A stretch of 59,649 nucleotides of DNA, filler included, from Platydemus manokwari (taxonomy: Eukaryota): the NCBI GenBank assembly GCA_037951405.1. It is 5 parts of 5 records of this genome, joined end to end, with 100 filler letters (N's around TTAATTAATTAA, not from the genome) between each part and the next. Parts side by side here need not be neighbours in the genome. Positions count along the whole stretch, not along the records: positions 10,496 to 23,317 come from JBBMOY011955825.1; 4 more parts are not named here. The stretch is one strand, 5' to 3'. Within the stretch, counting starts at the first letter, position 1. Every line of letters begins with the position of its first letter. The translations under genes were made by a program, and so were the position numbers. Under the pieces are notes generated by a model. It was given only the letters and a program-made list of their open reading frames with translations. It was not told the origin of the DNA and searched no databases. Of this stretch, positions 10,496 through 23,317 are shown one piece after another.

Positions 10496-13400
10496 GAAAT
10501 ATAATATTGTTCCCATTATTATTATTATCGATGATAATTTGGTATCAACTGGTGCTACAGGAATATCTTGTCAATTATCTCAGATTATTAATAGTTTCAA
10601 CTTGTTGAAGTCGTTATTAAGGCACATATATTCCAATATTATCATCGAAACAACTCACTTGACCATTTCACTCTCATTAATTTTTATCTGATCAGACATT
10701 TTACATTAAATAAAAACACTCGTACATAATGGGAAATTGGATGACTTTCACATGATTCAGATTGGTTCAATTTGTGAGTATTACTGTTGCCTTCTGTCCG
10801 TAGTATAAGAATTGACACTTTTTTGATCAAAATTATGGATACTTCATTTGAAGAACATTGTTAATCAATTAGATCTTCAGACATTAATTGAAATAAATCA
10901 TTGAAATTACATTCGAAATCAGTCCTGTAGAAAAGAAATGTTTCAATGAAATGTAAATTTGACATAAATGTTCATGTTCGATAAATTAAAATTAATGTGA
11001 TCAGATTACATGGTTCGATAAAGGGCTTTAGTAGTAAGTATGATGACTAAAGCACTGGAATGATATAATTAATCTAAAGAAAAAACTAAAAAATAACTAT
11101 ATATATTTAATAAACATAGGACTTTTAATAAGTTTGACCAATGCCAAGATTTCAAAAAGTTGAATCTGACACATAAACAACTGAGACTTTCCGAAAATAG
11201 TCTTAGTAATCCCATTTTTCTTATTGATCGTTCTGCTTTTTTTTAAATTTCACTTCATCCATTATAAACTTTCGTCTATGCCCGGTAGGAGACGTCAGAT
11301 GATCATTAATATGTCCAGCATTTTTGCTTACTCACGAATTATTGTTCAACAAGGAACCAATATACTCTTTTTTTATCTCTTCTAAAGGGCATTAGCGATT
11401 CAATTCAAGTGACCATTTGTTTTCTGAGATGAAAATCCGATTGTCAGTAGGCAGCCTTGATGCATTTCGTGGGGATCTTGTTAATTTTAAATTTAAGTTT
11501 CAAATTTAATCTGAGTTTTTATTTCTAGAACCGATTATTGTAAATTAGCATGGTTTTTGGCTAAACCATCGTCTGAACACAATGTCTATTGATTACTGTT
11601 GTTTTAACAAGTGATAATATTGTTACTTTGTAATGACACGATATCGCTTTATAATTATATATTTATTAACTAATAAATTTGCTTTTGCTTAATACTAACT
11701 ATATGTTTATTCAAATAATAAGACCTTTATGATTTAATAAAATTTGTTTAAAAAATATGAATATTAGCAGGCTTTTGAAAACGATAGAAAATAAAAGTGT
11801 AATACCCGGTTCACTAGATTTGTAGGTTTTGGAAAAATTCCACGAGGACGTATAAGAGTAACAAGGGAAAACTGATTTAGTATGATAAAATAATAATTAT
11901 CATAATAATATTTAAATAAACGATTAATTCTTTTAAATTATAAATGAGAAAAATTACGTTAACAGAATTAAACTTTCTCACCTACAGGCTATTTCCCATT
12001 TGTTCTCCGCGTAATTAAAATGAGCTCTCGTTCAATGAATAAAACCTCTTCTTGGAAACGTCAAATTCTTCTTGAAATTAAATCTTAATGAATTGCAAAT
12101 TTAAAAATTTTACATTGTATTCTTGAAGTCAACTCGCTACTTGATGTTTACTGCTTTATAATGATTTTCTTACGTACTTCTTACGATGATATTTTATTGT
12201 TAATATCTTATGGTTAATTGTCATTTGTAACTGAGAATTAGCGTCTTATTTTTTATTATTACTTGTTAAACACTACTTACTTAAATTCTAGTAATTACAA
12301 TTTTTGCACTATAATTTTTTATTGTAATACTATTCGTTTATCATTATTATTATTTATTATAATCTTTTATCGGTTTTTTCTCTTTATTTCTCTTTTACAA
12401 TTAAATCTCTTATTCACAATTACATTAATTAAACATTTGCTATATTTATCATATTAAATAAATTATCATTTGATAAAAATTATGACTATATATAAAGGAC
12501 AGAATATTCATAATTACAGATTTCTACAATGAAATGATATCCATTGTGTTTGTTCAATTTTCAAAATCAAATTATATTCCTGATTAAAATTAAATTAAAT
12601 TATATTGTTCGTTGATTGTTACATCGCAACTGAATGGATTTATTGTTTAGATTTCCAAAAGAATACAAATCAGAAGAAGGATGATTTGGTAAAGAATAAA
12701 GATGGATTAGAGATGGTCTGTGTTATAAGGAAATTATCATACTTCAGTATTTTATATGGTTTCCGTATTTTGTGCATAATATATTATTAGGTAATTTTCT
12801 TAAATAATTCACACACGTCATGATCTTTCAAGCATCATTCGAAATATCACTGAAAATTTGGTTACCGAATATTCGGCAATTCAAACAAATATTACATCGA
12901 TAGACTGGTTTTGTTGTCCTTTCTTAAATAAGACATCGAAACATTACAATTCATTTAGAAGTGCATTATTGTCATTGACTACTTTACACAGTTGTACAAA
13001 TCACTTGACTCTTGAAAGTCAGTATTTGCTGTGATCGTATTCTGTCTCCATATCAGCCTATTCCTCACACATATTTTAATATATAAACTTGTATTACAGA
13101 TTTTGACGAATTCATATTAAATCAAATTTACTGCATTCACTTTTACAATGAGTTAAGAAATGGAAAATCATTGATAATATTATTAAGAGATTTTGTTAAT
13201 ATCTTATTCTGATTTATTCAGTAAATATCAAAAATGCTAGCTTATGAATGTCATTAATGAATGATATCATTGTTAATATTGGCTATTAACGTCGGCGTTA
13301 CATTCATTTATAAAGACCGACAGAGTTAATGTAAAATATTTGAAATAAACATAAAGATTCCGTTGGAATAGTAACGAATTTGTAACAGAATTGTTTATCG

Positions 13401-15565
13401 TGTAACAATTTTTTTTGGAAATATAATTGTCTAAATCAGTCACCGCCAATTCCATCAAATAAAAATTTAAAGATTTCATGATATATCAATGGCTTATTTC
13501 TAAAGACGATTATTCAGTCAAATGAACGAAACTGTAAAATCAATGTTATTATAATTGTAATGAGAGATAAATCATAATTTTTTACAATTTTTATTAAAGA
13601 AATTAACCATAAAATGCATATCTGATATTTTACGTGTTTTCTGTCTATAGTTGGAAATTCGGAACAATTTAATATTTAATGAGAAATATTAGTAAAATAA
13701 TCAAGAATCTCTCAGATCATTTTCTTAAAGATTCGACATCCTTGATTTCATGACATAGCTTTTATGGAAACACTTCAATAAATGTTAAAGGACTTTAAAA
13801 TAGGAATTGTCGGTGAATTGCTTATCAATTACCAAATGAATAACTTTATAGTATCAATTTCGTATGGCAGTGGAGTATAATTTAAATAACAAATTCAAAT
13901 ATTCGAGTATCAGGTCATGTATTTTAATAATATATTCAAATTATATAAGGTCTGTTATTTAATACAATTTCATATTAAAATAATTCAGAAATATATAGAA
14001 ATTATATAGATATTAAAATCTTAAGAATTATTTGAGCTCCATTTATTTGAATTAAAGAATTTCGTTTGTACACCTGACACCAAAAGGCGTATGTAATTGT
14101 GGACAATTTAGAGTTAGATTGTAAAATAATACTAGAATAAATAATGTGATCTAAATAAATTATAATTAGTACTGCAATAAATACAGGTCAATGATTTCAA
14201 TGATGTTTAAATAAAATCGTAAAATAAAATAATATTATTACAATAAGATAGGCTAGAGTTTGAGCAAATACTTTTGTGAAGTACTTTTGAATTTTCAATT
14301 ATACAGCCAGTGTAAGGTTCTATTATGATAAAATTAAACATTTTTGTTGACCTCTTATGGCAGTGCCTGTAAGAGCCCTTAATTGATTTTATCGGTGGTC
14401 AGGTCTGATGACACTTTAACCACTATTATAGATTTGTTGGAATTTAATATTTTATTTTAAATTATAGGTGAACACTGATCAGTCTAGTATGGTATGAGTA
14501 GTATGTAGTATGATAAATTAAATAATTCAATGTATAAAATTAAATTTCAGATATTCAATTATGATAAAATTTGTTTAAGAAATTGACTAGAAAGAATATA
14601 ATACAGCTCAGAAATTAGTAAAAAGATTTCAAATCAATAATTAAAGCTTGTACACGTTACAATTTTTATGGTTTAACAGCTACCCATGAATTCGAATTGG
14701 CAAATATGTTAATAGATCGTAGATTTTTCTTCTCTTCTTCTTTAATAATTCATGGTTTAAATACTATTTTTCTTGTTGTTTTGATCCTATTTGAATTTAA
14801 TTGTTAATCCAATTTTGAAATTATTAATTCCACGTCAAGTAATTAGATCTGGTTAAATCCGAGTTGGGTCTTTAAATAGTTAGTTCTAAATTGAATAATA
14901 AGATTCAGTAATTATGCTATTTTGAATAGTATATTTCAGGCTGGTTTAATGATCGTTTTATCTTGTTTATACTCGTTATTTTTCTTTGTTATTTCTTTAT
15001 AGACATTATTTATACAATGTTTATCCCTTAATTCCTATTGTTACCATTGTTAGATAATAATCCATGTTTTTTCTATTTCTATATTTATTAGTTTCTATTT
15101 TGGTTTCTGTTTTAATATGATTCTATTTTAGGCAAATTAATGTTTGGAGTGATTCATGCAGTTGTTAATTTTTGCAAAAAATTTAAATATGAAATATATT
15201 CATATTATTTATTATAGGGTTTAACCCATATACATGATTTAAAATTTGTAAGCATTTTTACCAATGAAGGTATTGAAAATTTAAAATTACTAAATATAAA
15301 CTAATATGATTAGAGCATTTTTATAGCTTAAATTTCGAAATCTTTTTGATATACTTATGCTTACAACCATAATTTCGAAGTAATGGATTAAATAAAGTTT
15401 GAATAATTCAAAGATGGTTTATTGAAATATAAAAATTAATTAAATTAAAAAAATAATAATTCTGAATTAAAAGAATATAGAAATAAGCTTAAGTAATGAA
15501 ATTAATTTTAATTTTATTAAATTATGATTTCTTTGGTTTTTGACTGTTGTTTTCTGAGGTTTTAA

Positions 15566-17634
15566 TCATATTCTGTTAAGAATGTCTATAATCTTTATAA
15601 CCAAAGGTAGACCATCACTTCGTAACCATAATTTCAAATTAGTAGCAAAGGAGGGTTTTTCAGGTGGTTGTTGTTGAGTAATATTGTTTACATTGGATTG
15701 TAAAACCTCGGTTTCACTTAGGTTAGAGTATACTTCTTGGGGACCAATATCATTCATATCTAAAGATTCTTTTTCGCTATCAATGAAATCTTTCGAATTA
15801 TCAAGATCTTTCGCTACTTCATCGTGAACAGTGCCTTCGTTTTTATTTTCTATTTCAATTATATTTTTATCTTCTATATTAATATCGGGCTCTTCACTGT
15901 TGATATTATTATCTTGATGATTCTCAACTGGGCAATCACGTGTAATTGTTTGAGATATATTTAATTTTTGATTTTCATCCTCCATCGTTTCATTGTCGAT
16001 TTTATCTTTGTTTTGTTCTGGATTATAGTTACGTTGATCATTTCTATGTAATGATAACGATTTGTTGTCAACGATTTCCGATTCAATTATCGAATTCATA
16101 TTGTCCGAAGGTAACGATTGCAAACTATTGATCGATAAATCCAGATTGGATTGATTTTTCCAGTAATTGTTTCTCAAAGACGACCAAGAATGTTCAGAGC
16201 CTGGAAATGATGACAGTTATTTAGTCGTTTATGTTTTTCAATATCTTACTTGGAATTGAATTTATCGATGAAATTTTCGTCTTCCAATTCGATAGTTGAG
16301 GAAAATTCTGATTGAAGTTCTTTAATTCATGAAGACATTGACTAAATTCTAGACAATCACGAATTTCGGAATTCAGCTCGCTCTTCATTATCATACAAAT
16401 CAAAAAATGAGCACTGCAATTTGATTTGAATACTCCACTAAACAGGCGTGACAACTTGGAATTTCTATAAGGTGGGCGAGCCTGAAATACATGATTATAG
16501 AGTGTTTAATGTATTTTAGAATTATATATATTTTATAACATTAAAAGGAAAATTTATCCTTAGCTATATATAATAATAATTTAATAAATATAATTACCTC
16601 TTTATTGGTGATTGATTTAATTAGAGATTTTAACATTGTTAGAGAAACATTTATCGACTTAGTTTCATTGGTCCATGATTTAGAAAAAGATTTATCGAAT
16701 GAATTTTGATAGCTAGCAAGATCGATAAATGAAAATTTTCGAATTTTAACCCGGTTCATTAATTTTTCCTTGATTTGAATGTTGTATACAACATGACTTC
16801 GATTGCAGGTATATTTTCCATTGACCGTCAATTTATGCATTCGCAATTTGGCTTTTTTCATTAGCTTAAACAAATCAACTTTGGTTTTGATATTGATTTC
16901 AGTCAAATTCTTCACATACACAGAACCGTCTTTGGCATCGAAGAAATTCAAGTTCGAAGTGCCACCTGAATGAAAATTTATTTATTAAGTTATTAAAGAT
17001 TCATTAAATTAATTTATGGTATGATTAATATTTAGTTGTTGAGAAGAATCAATTAATTACCTGTCATTAGATCTATTATTTTCTCGTTGTATATTTCGAA
17101 GCACGATGCCTGCACAATCATTAAACATACCAGCACAAAATAAATATAAAATCAAACCATTATTTCATAATTAAAACTCTTGATTTTGTTCTGATTCAGA
17201 AAATATTGAACCACTGTGGGTAAAATGCCGATTTCGTTTCCCGATTCTAAGTTGCCCTATTTTTGATAATCAATAAAATTGAATATTTACAAAGCATTTC
17301 TTTTACCTTTATCGAATATGATTTACCACTTTTAGATTGACCATATGTGATGAAAGCTGTGTTTAAATTCCCATTATCATTACAATTCATCAAATTCTCA
17401 TAGATTTGGCTTGTTAGCTGTTTCTGAACATCGTTGCCATTGAAAATGTAATCAAATGAGAATAATTCGTTCTAAAATAAAGAAAAAAAACAATTAACAA
17501 GGAAAACAAAACCAAGATTAACAAACATCTTTCAAAGCAGAGTAAATCGGATCCGAAAGTACCAAACCGGGATTATTTAAAATTTCTTCTGAATTGATTC
17601 GACAGTACAATTTAACATTCTTAGCGTAATTCAT
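15566..17634 (-). CDS. Divergent kinesin-1-like protein A with degenerate switch motifs; exons 17634-17527, 17471-17307, 17256-17158, 17109-17061, 16965-16598, 16481-16250, 16200-15566 (551 aa)
   Basis: NVKLYCRI, FSFDYIF, P-loop YGQSKSGKS, GILP, FEIYNEKIIDL, VYVKNLTE, NRSH, FSFIDLASYQ, INVSL and PPYRNSKLSRL occur in kinesin order. All introns are GT-AG and frame-consistent. The tail is N/E-rich and low in complexity. Confidence 0.9.
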
Positions 17635-18259
17635 TTTGAAGATAAGTGATAATGATTAAAATTAAGATCATGCAGTTATTTATGTTCACTAATTGCACAA
17701 TATTGTCCTTATTTATTTTCCTTAAAATTTAATTTTATAAGTTTTTTGAATATTTCTTCATATCGACAATACAAACAGCAATTATATATATATATACGAG
17801 AGATTTGTATTCTATAATTAAAATTAAACGCTGCGGTGAGACCGTACACTAATTTTGTTAAAATTCAGCATATAAATGTAAAGAAGTGAATACTAGATAC
17901 TTAAAATAGTGTAGGAAGCACAGGGTTACTTGAAGTTGGAACATCATAAATTACTTTATTACTTTTCGCACAATTTAATTTGGTGGTAGTTCGTGTCAGT
18001 CAGGTATGCGATTGTTATATTTGTAGTGTGTCAGGCAGATATAACAGTTACAATTGTAATAGTTTTGAAAATCAATATTAGAAATGTGTTTCGATAATTT
18101 GTCGCTTTATTAGTGATTTTATGAAGGCCAATAATTTCAGTTATTGAAATTACAAATCAATTTGGTAATTCTAATTTTAAATAGTCTATGAATATAAATA
18201 ATAATTATTATAATTCATTTTATTATTATGTTCAATATCATGTTATGAAATATTTTATA

Positions 18260-18261
<2 letters not shown>

Positions 18262-18299
<38 letters not shown>
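18262..18299. repeat. (TTA)n microsatellite between the two kinesin genes
   Basis: Direct reading. Confidence 0.9.
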
Positions 18300-18412
18300 T
18301 CTGCAAATATTATTATTCAATAAATAATCTATTCTTCCGTGTTTAATATTTCCTTATTTAATTTTATAATATAAGACCTTATTTTATTAAACCCATCTTT
18401 TATAATCCAATC

Positions 18413-20874
18413 ATGTCTGCTAGATTTAATGTTTTATGTCGCATTGCAGCTAATATCACTGAAAATAAATATTGCAACCAAAGAGAAGTAATAAGTAAGA
18501 CAACGGAAAATAAAATCATTTTTGAAGGACATAAGGTACATTGTTCAATTAGATGGATTTATTCTTATATCATATTTCATTTAGATCAAAGATTATCAAT
18601 TCGATCATGTTTTCGATTCTACATCATCACAGACCGATGTTTTCAAATATCTGGAAGGAAACATTATCACTGATCTATTCAATGGAAGAGATTGCAGTGT
18701 CATTGCATACGGTCAAGTCAAAAGTGGTAAATCATTCACCATACATGTTAGATGATTTCATTTTATCGTTTATAATTTTATAAATATTTCTTTCTCAGGG
18801 TGATGTAAAACGACATGAAAATCGTGGATTGGTTCCCCGATTCATCGAGTCGATTTTCGAGAAAAAGTTTCAATTGGGAGTACAGATCGTTGTCACGGTA
18901 ACGATTATACATTATTTCATTGATTTTTACATTTATAATTACAGATTTCGGCTTTAGAAATTCACGGTGAAAAAATTATCGATTTGTTTAATGGTAAAAT
19001 AGAAATTATTTGATTTTGATTTCATTTTAATTCCCTTTTATCAATTTTAGAAAATAATAAAATCAGAATATTTGAAGATGAAAACAAGCACAATCACATT
19101 GAAGTAGTAGTTTTATAATCAATTGATTTCTATCTCATTTAATTGTTGATATTTTCAGAATCTATCAGAAAAAGATATTGGTAATAGTTTTGAAGCAGCT
19201 AAACTATTAAAGAAATGTTATAAAATAATGCATTCAACACGAACACGTAAGATTTGTAATAATGTTTTGATTAAATATTTTATATCATGGGTTTAGATGT
19301 CAACAAGTTTTTTAGTAAAAGTCATACGCTATTCATTGTTAAAATAACTCAATCTCATCCCGATAAACTCGGTCAACTGACGAGTTCTCTATTATTGGTA
19401 GATCTTGCTGCAAATGATCATCTTTCGAAAAGCAAATTTTCAATTTGTTCGGTTTCTGAAAATAAAGATATCCGAAAATCATTATGTAGTCTCGAGAATG
19501 TGATGCATGCTCTAGCAATGAAACAAGTGAGTATTTTCATTAGAAATGTTGATAAGAATTTCTCAATTGATATTTATAGAATCATATTCCTTATCGAGAA
19601 AGTAATCTGACGAGATGTCTTCAAAACGGTCTTCAGAATGATTCGACAACGAATTTTATAATTTGTTTGTCTCCTTTGTTAATCAACAGCAATGAATCGA
19701 AAACATCTTTATCGTTCAGTGAAAAGATTCGTGGAATTAAGCAAGAAACTCCAAAACAAGGACTGTGTTGCATTCCATGGGTATCTCCAAGAAAGAAAGG
19801 TCAATGTGAAAAGATTGATAAGCATTCATTAGGAATTCAAACAAATATTGTATTACCAGAGGTTTTAATAGATTATACATATGAGAATGAAGACAATAAA
19901 GGTTTAATTTTAAAATTTGAAATGAGAAATGTTAATAAATCTTTTCAGGTATTTTCGAAAGCCCTATTATAATAGTAGAGAAGACCATTAGCACTACAGA
20001 TAAATCAACGCAAATAAATATCAATTATCACAAAAATAAAAACTGGAAGATAAAATACGATGCTTTGAAGGTACCGGTTTTGAAATTGTTTTACAATTGA
20101 TTATTTCATTTATAGATTCAAAAATCGAAAATCAAAAAATTATTCCAAAAATTGAACAGCGACAATGCACATCAAGCAAACATCATTGATCATAATAACG
20201 AATTGATTGATGCATACAACGATCGAATTTACTTCCTGAATTCCGAATTGGAATATCGTTCGAAATTCCAACTTCAAGTTCAAGAATTTGAAATTACGGC
20301 TTTACAGTTTCGCAATTCGAGAAACTTCGGCGAATTGATGGAAAAAATTATTTCGATTGGAGAAGAAGTGGATAAAGAAATAACAGTAAGTTTATCAGTA
20401 AAGTATTTTTATTTAATTATCCGTTCCTATTGTAGAAACCGACGAATCTTGGATTGTCCGTTAGTTGTGAGGAAAATTGTACGAATATATTGAACTACAT
20501 GGATAAAGTGATATCTAAAATACAGTATTGGAAAATTTTAAATGACAAATTCATCGAAACAATAATTACCGACGAAGAAGCTCAATATTTGTTGGATTTG
20601 AAGATGGAAATTAACAATTATCGTAGATTGTATTCAGAAAACTTTATCATCAATTGTAAAAATAAGGAACAAATCGACTATTTCCAGAAGGAAAACGATT
20701 ATTTAAAATTGTTATTTCATATTATTTGATAGAAATTGTTTTTTAATATTTTTATTTGTATTCAGGAAGATCGAGAGAATAAATCAGCACAACGATCAAG
20801 TTAAAGAAAGAATAAAAGATGCTTTGGTGTTGAATTGTGAGATCAATCCGGTTGTATCGACAAATGGTGAATAA
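18413..20874 (+). CDS. Divergent kinesin-1 (KHC)-like protein B; exons 18413-18535, 18585-18746, 18799-18897, 18945-18993, 19051-19103, 19159-19246, 19297-19526, 19580-19901, 19949-20070, 20116-20385, 20436-20710, 20766-20874 (about 633 aa)
   Basis: FNVLCRI, YQFDHVF, AYGQVKSGKSFT, GLVPR, LEIHGEKIIDL, FSKSH, LLLVDLAAND, HIPYRESNLTRCLQ, neck-like WKIKY and a coiled-coil tail. Eleven frame-consistent GT-AG introns; the last is least certain (alternative stop at 20729). Confidence 0.9.
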
Positions 20875-22989
20875 AATGATCGACATCGAATCCAATAGAA
20901 TGGACTGAATATGAATATTTTCTAACGGAATTTCATTTCAAAAATTATTTTTAAAATTTTCTTAAATTGTTTTACAAATATATTTTAATGAATCAGCTAG
21001 AGGCTTGAAATTGAAAATAATTCAAGCATAATTATTTAAATAAATGTTTTAAATTGATTTCATTGATTTGCACATCTCGGTGATTACAGTTTATATTTTA
21101 AAAATGATTCGTCCGGCAAATATTTTTGTAATAATTGTTTTATTATAAATTATTATTCAGAGTTATTATTATCGATCAATAGCAAATAATTTTCGTGATG
21201 GATTCTCTATTAAAGTTCATTTTGGTATCGGTATATTTTTGTAAACCCATCATTTATGTGTCAGCAGAATACACACATTTTTATAAATGTCGGTATGCAA
21301 GCCATTGTTGACCGCTTGTAAATCATTTAATTTCATTGAATAAATCAGTCTTAGAAACAATAGTTTTATTCTATTTTTAATTTAATTTTTAGACATATGG
21401 GGTGGCTTCTACTTATCGTTATGATCTTGGCTAGACTTATCACCAAGTCACAAAGTAAATTTTTAGTAAAATTTTAGAAAAAAGACACGAATGCACTTTG
21501 TTCGTTGGAAATTTATGCCCAAATTTTATAGTGAATGAAAAAAATGTGATAAGTTAATTTTTTAGATTATCAGAGACTTTCACGAAGGTTATATTTTTCA
21601 TGGAAATTTTCGAAATTATGAGTTTCAACTTTTATCTGCCATTTTTCTTGTCAAATGGATATTTTATATGAAACTTAAAGAATATAAGGTATGGGAAAGT
21701 CCAGTTTGCATCAACTTCTGGTCGAAGTTAAAGTCCTTCTCGTCCTGCATTAGATCACTGGTTAAGGACATGAAGCAAACAACTACCAAATAAATCATTC
21801 ATTCTCGAAATTGTCGCCATGCAAAATGGAATGTTGAATTACCCTTGTATTTTATTTGGTTAATGTCTTGTTGAAAAAATCGATATTTTTATTTGTTTGT
21901 GGCATTTATTATATCTATAAATTACTAGTCGACAATTAATCCATAAATGATCCAATCTTCTATTATTATAAATATCTTATTGACAAAATAAAGACTTGCA
22001 AATTTTGACTGACTCGTTCGGGAAGGAAATGAAAATGTGATAATATAAAGTCTAATAATAACTTCCAAAACTGAAACACATTGCACGATTATATTGACTT
22101 TCATTTACTTTTAATTGGCTAACGATAATATCGTCATTTAATGAAATTCTGTTGTTTAATTACATCAATAATGGATGCTGCCAATCATAGTGATTTCAAT
22201 TTCATGAGTTAATGGCAATTGAAAACTTGTTTAAGATTCGATTTTAATTTATTTCTTATAGAATACAAGCGATAGTTACTCCTTCTCTGGTAATTTTAAA
22301 ATAATAAAGGTGTCAATCATAGAAAATCGATTAAATTTTTTATTCTTATTGAATTTATTCTTATTAAACAACACGATAATGTATTATTGTTTTATTGTTG
22401 TAATTTTATCGGCTAGATAAACAGATTTGTTTAAAATGCTTTTGTCTCTTAATGTAGCCAATAAAATTTTATAGATAAATCTACAAATTGTTTTTCCTTG
22501 GGGATTAATAATCTATCTCAGATTTTAATAAAATTCAGGAAATTTGAATCCAAGCTTTATATATTATTGATTTTTGGGCATTGTTTTGATATTTTATTGA
22601 CTTATTTGTTATATAGTTTTTTCGTGTTCCTTATACTTAAATTCAGATAAATATTTAATGGCAAAAGATAACAACTTTAACTTTGTAAAAACAATTCTGA
22701 AAGTCATCTTATTGATTAACGATGAAAATTTTATAAAATAACATAAATATTTATCCAAAACCAGACCCAGAAATTTTTTCAGTTTTGGTCTGAGTTTTGA
22801 GTTCCTTGTTAAGTGGTCAAAATATTAAAAAACATAAATGAACTACCTTTTGCTGAAAATTAGTCCTATTTCAGTCCTCTGTAATCCTAATCAATATCTC
22901 TGTTCCGATATATATATACACGAAGATATCTCCGAGCTTTAGAAAAAATAACTTCAACGATGATAGTGGTGTTTTTTGGTGAGGAAAAT

Positions 22990-23047
22990 GTCCTATTTCG
23001 GCCTTTCATGGCCCTCATCAGTCCATTGGACCAGAGACAAATAGGAC
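22990..23047 (-). ncRNA. Hammerhead ribozyme-like motif (core intact, stem I imperfect)
   Basis: Minus strand reads GUCCUAU-U-UGUCUCUGGUCCAAUGGA-CUGAUGA-G-GGCC-AUGAAA-GGCC-GAAAUAGGAC: both core boxes, a 4-bp stem II and a 7-bp stem III. A degenerate copy is offset by 127 nt. Confidence 0.55.
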
Positions 23048-23317
23048 TAAAATAAATCTAGAAAATAGCTATCCATTTATATACTAATTTAGAGATTAAT
23101 TCATCAACAAATCCAAAACCCAGAGTTACTACACATACAAATCCACGCAAACCCCGATAGAATTTTAAAACGCTGACAGACAATAAATTGAACTTGACGA
23201 AATTCAATTCATAATGGATTACAAATTAAGCTACGAACATTGTGAGATATTTGATATTAAATGAATTTCAATTTAACTCGAAACAATTTTAATTTACAAT
23301 TATTCAAATTTTATTCA

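What the first reader, a model, noticed from the sequence alone, without database searches (positions are those of the whole stretch)
15566..20874. Head-to-head pair of probable pseudo-kinesins derived from kinesin-1
Two intact, spliceable kinesin genes are transcribed divergently with ATGs 778 bp apart. Both keep a GxxxxGKS P-loop with the same unusual Lys (GQSKSGKS, GQVKSGKS vs GQTxSGKT). Both have altered hydrolysis motifs, in different ways: switch I NxxSSRSH becomes KYTCNRSH / KFFSKSH, and switch II DLAGSE becomes DLASYQ / DLAAND (seen). The switch I Arg, switch II Gly and switch II Glu are needed for ATP hydrolysis (established); A lacks Gly and Glu, B lacks Arg and Gly and has Glu replaced by Asp. 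The microtubule-binding L12/alpha5 motif survives (PPYRNSKLSRL, HIPYRESNLTR). Inference: co-regulated non-motile microtubule binders, tethers or heterodimeric regulators of KHC, analogous to Smy1, Vik1/Cik1 or Costal2.
Basis: partly seen in the sequence, partly recalled or inferred. Interest (0 to 1): 0.75.

Follow-up and report, generated by a model that had tools for sequence, protein, structure and literature searches.

The report
Divergent pair of degenerate kinesin-1-like genes
Two intact neighbouring genes, read in opposite directions, encode fast-evolving relatives of the transport motor kinesin-1 whose ATP-burning residues are altered, so they probably grip microtubules without walking; this is a new example of a known kind of 'dead motor', with no expression or functional data yet.

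Summary
Gene A (minus strand, 7 exons, 551 aa, 15566-17634) and gene B (plus strand, 12 exons, 633 aa, 18413-20874) are complete GT-AG models with no in-frame stop. Their ATGs are separated by 778 bp. Every larger exon hits the Pfam kinesin motor domain. The microtubule-binding L12/alpha5 motif is kept.

The kinesin-1 origin is moderately supported by best matches to solved structures, by maximum-likelihood trees in which A and B were placed separately, and by an AU test that rejects a kinesin-5 placement (p 0.018).

Among 1.84 billion representatives, A's switch exon has one close relative, P0001 (41-44% identical). It shares A's altered switch I and the Tyr-Gln in switch II, so the altered state is old and conserved.

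B has a helical stalk. A has a disordered acidic tail and no stalk, which argues against a Kar3/Vik1-style coiled-coil heterodimer.

Verdict: real genes, probably ATPase-impaired microtubule binders; a new member of the known pseudo-motor kind. Interest is moderate to low.

The parts
15566..17634 (-). Gene A: 7-exon kinesin-like gene, 551 aa (motor about aa 1-330, disordered acidic tail aa 341-551)
   Evidence: Exons 17527-17634, 17307-17471, 17158-17256, 17061-17109, 16598-16965, 16250-16481, 15566-16200; all GT-AG; no in-frame stop. PF00225 on exons 2, 5 and 6.
18413..20874 (+). Gene B: 12-exon kinesin-like gene, 633 aa (motor about aa 1-330, linker, helical stalk)
   Evidence: Exons as listed in the observation check; all GT-AG; no in-frame stop. 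PF00225 on exons 2, 7 and 8.
17635..18412 (.). 778-bp shared upstream region between the two ATGs, 22% GC; a candidate bidirectional promoter (inferred)
   Evidence: Coordinates. GC. It holds a (TTA)n microsatellite at 18262-18299. No RNA family or tRNA was found.
17587..17604 (-). A: place of the N4 RxRP motif; only Cys-Arg-Ile is kept, the second Arg and the Pro are lost
   Evidence: Alignment to kinesin-1 sequences.
17319..17342 (-). A: P-loop (N1), GQSKSGKS
16793..16816 (-). A: switch I (N2), KYTCNRSH. Arg is kept; the first Asn and both Ser are changed.
   Evidence: K-Y and N-R-S-H are invariant between A and P0001.
16706..16723 (-). A: switch II (N3), DLASYQ. Gly is replaced by Ser and Ser-Glu by Tyr-Gln.
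   Evidence: Tyr-Gln is shared with P0001, which keeps the Gly.
16443..16475 (-). A: L12/alpha5 microtubule-binding motif, kept
15569..16198 (-). A: tail exon, 210 aa, net charge about -22. Predicted disordered except a C-terminal helical hairpin (15572-15649).
   Evidence: AlphaFold2 single sequence, mean pLDDT 53, with the last 27 residues at 77-89. No Pfam hit. No heptad signal.
18437..18454 (+). B: place of the N4 RxRP motif; only Cys-Arg-Ile is kept
18711..18734 (+). B: P-loop (N1), GQVKSGKS
19302..19325 (+). B: switch I (N2), NKFFSKSH. Arg is replaced by Lys and the first Ser by Phe.
19401..19418 (+). B: switch II (N3), DLAAND. Gly is replaced by Ala, Ser by Asn and Glu by Asp.
19583..19615 (+). 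B: L12/alpha5 motif, kept except Lys replaced by Asn
20116..20874 (+). B: helical stalk, exons 10-12
   Evidence: Exon 10 folds as one long helix, pLDDT 89. Heptad-like segments lie at aa 457-485 and 583-626; the latter runs across the last splice junction.

Best explanation
A and B are two selection-maintained, lineage-restricted, fast-evolving members of the kinesin-1 family. They probably descend from one old local duplication and now sit head to head. Their motor domains keep the kinesin fold and the main microtubule-binding motif, but all four nucleotide-pocket motifs have changed. The changes include the switch II Gly and Glu, whose mutation in KIF5B gives rigor motors that bind microtubules and neither step nor let go. 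The most likely working mode is therefore a microtubule-binding head with little or no ATP turnover. B would act as a dimer on a coiled-coil stalk, as a static tether or roadblock. A would act as a single head carrying a long acidic disordered tail with a short helical end.

Shown here: the gene structure, the motif states, the family placement, conservation of the altered motifs in one relative, and the tail predictions.

Inferred only: loss of ATPase, microtubule binding, dimerisation, and co-expression from the shared 778 bp.
For: - Complete GT-AG models with no in-frame stop, against 39-66 stops in the other frames; exons 32% GC and introns 20%.
- PF00225 hits exon by exon.
- Motif states read from alignments.
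- P0001 is the only close relative of A's exon 5 among 1.84e9 representatives. It is 41-44% identical to A, shares the loss of RxRP, switch I K-Y..N-R-S-H and Tyr-Gln in switch II, and 52 of 122 exon-5 columns are invariant, including these altered motifs.
- Kinesin-1 placement from solved structures: P0001 against kinesin-1 105 bits, OSM-3 93, KCBP 89. B exons 7 and 8 and A exon 6 match kinesin-1 best.
- Kinesin-1 placement from trees: B alone and A+P0001 alone each fall in the clade holding Drosophila and Pelomyxa KHC (SH-aLRT 99 and 97). The tree with them inside kinesin-1 is best, and a kinesin-5 placement is rejected (delta lnL 24.7, p-AU 0.018). A richer KHC sample gives the same place.
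- Five intron positions and phases are shared by A and B.
- Rigor phenotype of KIF5B G234A and E236A: PMC2172855 and PMC12005725.
- B's stalk is helical and A's tail disordered.
Against: - No transcript, protein or activity data.
- B's changes are chemically mild (Arg to Lys, Glu to Asp, Gly to Ala, Thr to Ser). The altered motifs of A are conserved with P0001, which could mean a working but unusual active site.
- Tree supports come from quick searches with very long branches. Both lineages attach next to the same divergent sequence, P0055, which could be long-branch attraction.
- Kinesin families 3, 4, 6, 7, 10 and 12 were not surely represented among the labelled rows. The groups for the AU test were named after the tree was seen.
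- A exon 5 alone scores slightly better with kinesin-5 (40 against 36 bits), and A exon 2 matches only CENP-E.
- A and B are less alike (23%) than either is to KHC (26% and 31%), so a single duplication is not proven.
Confidence: 0.55

Rival explanations
1. They are still working motors or ATPases with an unorthodox active site: slow, or specialised for something other than processive transport. The substitutions tune the chemistry rather than kill it.
For: - The P-loop Gly-Lys-Ser is intact in both, and GKS also occurs in canonical kinesin-1-like proteins.
- A keeps the switch I Arg. B's replacements are conservative.
- The altered switch I and switch II of A are invariant between A and P0001 at 43% overall identity in that exon, which suggests constraint on the pocket itself.
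Against: - In KIF5B, single changes at the switch II Gly or Glu already give rigor, hydrolysis-deficient motors (PMC2172855, PMC12005725).
- Each protein here carries changes at both positions, plus changes in switch I and loss of RxRP.
Confidence: 0.2
2. They are not derived from kinesin-1. They are an orphan, lineage-specific kinesin group that is pulled towards kinesin-1 because kinesin-1 has the shortest loops and because of long-branch effects.
For: - End branches are 1.5-3 changes per column, and the tree tool warned that long branches meet.
- The free quick tree is not rejected against the kinesin-1 tree (p-AU 0.12).
- A exon 5 scores best with kinesin-5 and A exon 2 with CENP-E.
- Several families were missing among the labelled rows.
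- No kinesin-1 tail features were seen. No Ile-Ala-Lys motif is visible in the translations, and the tails have no Pfam hit.
Against: - A+P0001 and B, placed separately, land in the same starred kinesin-1 clade.
- A kinesin-5 placement is rejected at p 0.018.
- All 24 best solved-structure matches of P0001 are kinesin-1 chains.
- A exon 6 aligns through the neck linker to the neck Trp of kinesin-1.
Confidence: 0.2
3. They are silent relics or gene-model mirages: not transcribed or not spliced as modelled, hence without function.
For: - No RNA evidence could be obtained.
- A's last-exon product (an ATG-start reading) is not on record in the assembly index, and no relative was found in metagenome contigs.
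- B's last donor is weak.
Against: - 19 exons with canonical splice sites and 1184 codons without a stop, in DNA that predicts one stop per 12 codons.
- Exon GC is 12 points above intron GC.
- An annotated relative, P0001, exists elsewhere.
- At 23-26% identity between A and B, any unconstrained copy would long since be broken.
Confidence: 0.05

Closest known systems
Kinesin-1 heavy chain (KIF5 / KHC / UNC-116)
   Same: N-terminal motor with the same loop lengths, aligning without gaps from switch II to L12. It is the best match among solved structures and the clade they join in the trees.
   Different: Identity is only 25-31%. RxRP is lost, and the P-loop Thr, switch I and switch II are altered. 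No neck coiled coil follows the head directly, no light-chain-binding or autoinhibitory tail motif was seen, and the proteins are 551 and 633 aa against about 815-980 aa.
Engineered rigor mutants of KIF5B (T92N, G234A, E236A)
   Same: A and B carry natural substitutions at the positions equivalent to G234 and E236. B has the same Gly-to-Ala change, and the best-scoring solved chain for B exon 7 also reads Ala there. The mutants bind microtubules, do not move and hardly hydrolyse ATP (PMC2172855, PMC12005725).
   Different: Those are single laboratory changes in an otherwise normal motor. Here many pocket residues differ, and nucleotide binding itself is uncertain.
Smy1 of budding yeast
   Same: A divergent kinesin-like protein that one large phylogeny places in kinesin-1 (PMC5076506). 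Its motor is thought not to act as a conventional transport motor (my own knowledge).
   Different: It is fungal. No sequence of it was at hand, so no direct comparison was made. Its partner and tail are unrelated as far as I know.
Vik1 / Cik1, the non-catalytic partners of Kar3 (kinesin-14)
   Same: A motor-like head without catalysis that still binds microtubules (PMC4338441).
   Different: They have a C-terminal motor-homology domain with no P-loop at all and pair with Kar3 through a coiled coil. A and B have N-terminal heads with a P-loop, belong to another family, and A has no coiled coil.
KIF7 / Costal2 and KIF26 / VAB-8 (non-motile kinesins)
   Same: Kinesin-family proteins that act as immotile microtubule-bound scaffolds (KIF7: bioRxiv 10.64898/2026.02.06.704517; the others from my own knowledge).
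   Different: They belong to other families (kinesin-4 and kinesin-11). P0001 scores 74 bits against the KIF4 structure, compared with 105 bits for kinesin-1. Their tails and partners differ.
P0018, Glossina austeni kinesin motor domain-containing protein (UniRef A0A1A9VBE7)
   Same: It is 48% identical to Drosophila KHC, and its P-loop, switch I and switch II are also degenerate, with Ala at the switch II Gly. It is an independent kinesin-1-derived degenerate head.
   Different: It is nested within the bilaterian KHC clade in the tree, in an unresolved position. Its P-loop is destroyed rather than kept. It is not related to A or B beyond the family, and it is unstudied as far as I know.

Membership tests
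Kinesin superfamily | Kinesin motor domain (Pfam PF00225) covering the catalytic core | tested here: met
   Exon-by-exon hits. A exons 2, 5, 6: E 3.7e-07, 1.7e-15, 7e-04. B exons 2, 7, 8: E 3.7e-14, 3.3e-12, 4.8e-11. Together they cover profile positions about 41-327.
Kinesin superfamily | Canonical nucleotide motifs N1-N4 (P-loop GQTxxGKT/S, switch I NxxSSRSH, switch II DxxGxE, RxRP) | tested here: not met
   The P-loop keeps G, GK and S but loses the Thr after Gln. Switch I, switch II and RxRP are altered in both proteins.
Kinesin-1 | Motor domain groups with kinesin heavy chains in a phylogeny | tested here: met
   SH-aLRT 99 (B alone) and 97 (A+P0001 alone) for the clade with Drosophila and Pelomyxa KHC. 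The constrained kinesin-1 tree is best and the kinesin-5 tree is rejected at p-AU 0.018. Same result with 20 labelled KHCs. Caveats: long branches, quick searches, incomplete family sampling.
Kinesin-1 | N-terminal motor followed by neck linker and neck coiled coil | tested here: inconclusive
   The motor is N-terminal in both. A exon 6 and B exon 8 align through the neck linker of kinesin-1. No heptad signal follows directly: B's helices start about 100 residues later, and A has none.
Kinesin-1 | Tail features: light-chain-binding stalk and the autoinhibitory Ile-Ala-Lys motif | tested here: not met
   No Ile-Ala-Lys is visible in either translation. The tail exons have no Pfam family. Only sequence-level checks were made.
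Kar3 partners Vik1/Cik1 (motor-homology domain proteins) | C-terminal motor-like domain without a P-loop, joined to a partner motor by a coiled coil | tested here: not met
   The heads are N-terminal and the P-loop is present. A lacks a coiled coil.
Pseudo-motor (functional class, not a clade) | No ATP hydrolysis, with microtubule binding kept | not testable with these tools
   Only inferred, from substitutions at the positions of rigor mutations and from the kept L12/alpha5 motif.
Kinesin-5 | Groups with Eg5/Klp61F | tested here: not met
   A exon 5 scores best with Klp61F by 4 bits. The tree that holds the trio with the kinesin-5-containing group is 24.7 lnL worse and is rejected.

The most novel reading that the evidence does not exclude
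The two genes form one co-expressed module. B would be a dimeric, naturally rigor kinesin-1 derivative that parks on microtubules. A would be a monomeric dead head with an acidic tail that competes for, or marks, the same lattice sites. Together they would gate traffic of the canonical kinesin-1 in a particular tissue. The degenerate pocket, conserved in its altered form, would serve as a nucleotide sensor rather than an engine.
Probability: 0.08. Interest if true: 0.6.

Novelty: new member of a known kind. Interest (0 to 1): 0.33.

Why it matters
If the heads bind microtubules without turnover, they are natural versions of the rigor mutants that laboratories engineer into kinesin-1. They would show which parts of the motor stay under selection once catalysis is given up. 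Their altered switch motifs are conserved between two species, which makes them a useful test of what a kinesin pocket does besides hydrolysis. Beyond that, the finding is an ordinary case of lineage-specific kinesin duplication and divergence. It does not open a long-standing question.

Tried and rejected
- An exact look-up of A's last-exon product (an ATG-start reading) found no record.
- Two metagenome scans (a profile of A exon 5 plus P0001, and B exon 7) found no relatives.
- The protein atlas gave nothing usable for A's tail and only sub-threshold zipper-like look-alikes for B exon 11.
- A word search with P0001 was biased by its length window towards 500-aa fungal kinesin-14s, and I discarded it as a family indicator.
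- P0005 looked like the best relative of both proteins. It is a fish KIF2C model with two motor domains whose scores add up.
- An alignment of P0055 with B's exons as a search profile was built and dropped. Short exons misaligned, and generic kinesin-1 fragments would have swamped any B orthologue. B's relatives were therefore never searched exhaustively.
- The 'careful' tree run was killed by the sandbox, so all trees come from quick searches.
- No DNA-level inverted repeat links the two genes.
- No phylum signal appears in the scores to animal KHCs.
I worked out motif coordinates by hand.
- Joined spliced proteins were never sent to the search, family, structure or fold tools; those were queried exon by exon by reference. 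The joined models were assembled from the window file only inside local scripts, for frame checks, local alignment against fetched proteins, and trees. A fold of a whole head of A or B was therefore left out.


Full report
**What is there.** The piece (10496-23317) is 26.7% GC. Between 15566 and 20874 it holds two genes on opposite strands.

- I built the models by reading the three-frame translations and fixing each boundary on GT..AG.
- Gene A (minus strand) has 7 exons and 551 codons. Gene B (plus strand) has 12 exons and 633 codons.
- The start codons are at 17634 and 18413, leaving 778 bp between them. The stop codons begin at 15568 (minus strand) and end at 20874.
- Introns are 45-57 bp in B and 48-116 bp in A.
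- Neither coding sequence has an in-frame stop, whereas the other two frames of each carry 39-66 stops. Exons are 32% GC and introns 20%.
- From base composition, a random codon is a stop 8.5% of the time, so A's 211-codon last exon stays open by chance with p about 7e-9.
- These are maintained reading frames, not chance ORFs.
- One weak point is B's last donor, GTTATT. The alternative is a stop at 20729, giving 603 aa. A heptad-like pattern that runs across this junction favours the 12-exon model.

**How the models were searched.** They were not handed to the family, structure-bank, big protein or fold tools. A structure prediction of a whole head is therefore missing.

**Kinesin motor domains with a changed nucleotide pocket.** Pfam's kinesin motor domain matches A exons 2, 5 and 6 and B exons 2, 7 and 8 (E from 1.7e-15 to 7e-4). 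Together these cover the profile from about position 41 to 327. In alignments with kinesin heavy chains the four nucleotide motifs read as follows.

| Motif | Canonical | A | B | P0001 |
|---|---|---|---|---|
| N4 | RxRP | Cys-Arg-Ile only | Cys-Arg-Ile only | Cys-Arg-Ile only |
| P-loop | GQTSSGKT | GQSKSGKS | GQVKSGKS | GQIGSGKS |
| Switch I | NEHSSRSH | KYTCNRSH | NKFFSKSH | K-Y..N-R-S-H, as in A |
| Switch II | DLAGSE | DLASYQ | DLAAND | Gly kept, Tyr-Gln as in A |

One nuance is that B's switch I Arg is replaced by Lys. Another is that Ser for the last P-loop Thr also occurs in canonical kinesin-1-like proteins in my set (P0019, P0027).
- The start of alpha4 and the L12/alpha5 microtubule-binding motif are kept in A. 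In B they are largely kept, with Asn replaced by Arg in alpha4 and Lys by Asn in L12.

**Relatives.**

- An exhaustive phmmer search of 1.84 billion representatives with A's exon 5, which holds both switches, gave 43 hits. Only one was close: P0001, E 4e-17, 44% identity.
- P0001 is a 341-aa UniParc-only entry with no taxon attached. It has no close relative of its own: the next best hit is 28-29% identical.
- Over the whole head, A and P0001 are 41% identical.
- P0001 shares A's loss of RxRP, its switch I (K-Y..N-R-S-H) and the Tyr-Gln in switch II, but it keeps the switch II Gly.
- Thus the loss of the catalytic Glu predates the split of the two species, and the loss of the Gly in A came later.
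- The altered motifs are among the 52 invariant columns of 122 in exon 5. The pocket is not decaying freely; it is conserved in its altered form.
- The window's own products are not in the collections. Two metagenome scans found nothing.

**Which family.**

- *Solved structures.* P0001's 24 best matches are kinesin-1 chains (up to 105 bits), ahead of OSM-3 (93), KCBP (89), KIF3B and KIF18A (85) and KIF4 (74). B exons 7 and 8 and A exon 6 also match kinesin-1 best. The A exon 6 alignment runs through the neck linker to the neck Trp. A exon 5 prefers kinesin-5 by 4 bits. A exon 2 matches only CENP-E weakly. B exon 2 is undecided.
They were labelled by source names or diagnostic signatures. In the full set, A+P0001 (100) join B (84), with a warning that long branches meet.
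- *Separate placement.* With A and P0001 left out, B falls in a clade (99) that holds Drosophila KHC and Pelomyxa KHC. With B left out, A+P0001 fall in the same clade (97). In both cases they attach next to P0055, a plankton-derived protein with canonical motifs whose own relatives are all KIF5/KHC.
- *AU test.* The tree that holds the three sequences with the kinesin-1-like rows is the best found (lnL -28883.4, p-AU 0.92). The free quick tree is 22.8 worse (p-AU 0.12). A tree that holds them with the kinesin-5-containing group is 24.7 worse and is rejected (p-AU 0.018).
- *Richer sampling.* A second tree with 20 labelled KHCs from nematodes, rotifers, a flatworm, an annelid, a mollusc, arthropods, vertebrates, a fungus and Pelomyxa puts {P0055, B, A, P0001} (95) beside the bilaterian KHC clade and inside kinesin-1.
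- *Caveats.* Branches are very long. Searches were quick because the careful one was killed. Groups were named after seeing the tree. Families 3, 4, 6, 7, 10 and 12 were not surely among the labelled rows.
- I take 'kinesin-1-derived' as the best-supported reading, at about 0.75.

**Are A and B a duplicate pair?** Five intron positions with the same phases are shared. These are the first four introns of each gene and the intron just before the L12 motif. Both proteins also share the Cys-Arg-Ile remnant and the P-loop Lys. However, they are only 23% identical, less than either is to KHC (26% and 31%). Their grouping in the tree could be long-branch attraction. No DNA-level repeat links them. 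An old local inverted duplication is the simplest account, given that they are adjacent, but it is not proven.

**Tails.** None of the tail exons has a Pfam family.

- A's 210-aa last exon is rich in Asn, Ser, Asp and Glu, with a net charge of about -22. It is predicted disordered (mean pLDDT 53) except for a confident helical hairpin in the last 27 residues.
- B's exon 10 folds as one long helix (pLDDT 89). Heptad-like segments lie at aa 457-485 and 583-626.
- So B can plausibly dimerise through a stalk and A cannot.

**How it most likely works.**

- In KIF5B the single mutations T92N, G234A and E236A give rigor motors that bind microtubules and neither move nor dissociate (PMC2172855). E236A almost abolishes hydrolysis and traps the head on the microtubule (PMC12005725).
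- A (Gly to Ser, Glu to Gln) and B (Gly to Ala, Glu to Asp) are changed at both positions, and also in switch I and N4.
- My best reading (0.55) is that both are ATPase-impaired microtubule-binding heads. B would be a dimeric static binder. A would be a single head with an acidic tail.
- The shared 778-bp upstream region suggests co-regulation, but nothing tests it.
- Rivals, as scored in the report's rival section: unusual but working ATPases (0.2), silent relics (0.05), and an orphan family rather than kinesin-1 (0.2; that question is independent of the functional readings, so the figures do not sum to one).

**Comparison with the known.** Dead or immotile kinesin heads are a known kind: Vik1/Cik1 (PMC4338441), KIF7 (bioRxiv 10.64898/2026.02.06.704517), and Smy1, which one phylogeny places in kinesin-1 (PMC5076506). 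My searches also turned up an independent example, P0018 from Glossina austeni. It is 48% identical to KHC and has a destroyed P-loop and Ala at the switch II Gly. A and B are therefore a new member of that kind: a kinesin-1-derived, P-loop-keeping pair. They are not a new kind of system.

**What could not be done.** The organism, expression, splice confirmation, selection tests on DNA, synteny in relatives, and any fold of a whole head remain open, as does a search for B's orthologues.

Noticed in passing
window 18262-18299 (within 18198-18300): A perfect (TTA)12.7 microsatellite inside a looser 12-bp AT-rich array. It lies in the region between the two start codons, about 115 bp upstream of B's ATG.
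   Followed up: no
window 10496-15500 and 20900-23317: Both flanks (about 7.5 kb, 25.7% GC) have no open frame that looks coding, no tRNA and no Rfam match. The two kinesin-like genes sit alone in the piece.
   Followed up: partly
window 15076-15129: A 28-bp tandem repeat, 1.9 copies, about 440 bp downstream of gene A's stop.
   Followed up: no
P0018 (Glossina austeni, UniRef A0A1A9VBE7, 686 aa): A tsetse-fly protein 48% identical to Drosophila KHC. Its P-loop, switch I and switch II are all degenerate, so it is an independent kinesin-1-derived dead head.
   Followed up: partly
P0055 (470 aa; JGI/IMG and Tara-type marine samples): A divergent kinesin-1-like protein with canonical motifs and no close relative of its own (best 38-46% to KHCs). 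It is the row next to which A+P0001 and B each attach in the trees. It is either a true canonical cousin or a long-branch partner.
   Followed up: partly
P0005 and cluster (Lepidogalaxias salamandroides, KAM9121738.1 and others): Fish KIF2C gene models with the whole motor region repeated twice in one protein, in a cluster of nine KIF2C-like models. This is either a tandem duplication or an annotation fusion, and it inflated whole-sequence scores.
   Followed up: partly
PDB chain 9l78_A, best match of window 19299-19526: The best-scoring solved kinesin-1 chain for B exon 7 itself reads Ala at the switch II Gly position, the same residue as B (alignment).
   Followed up: no
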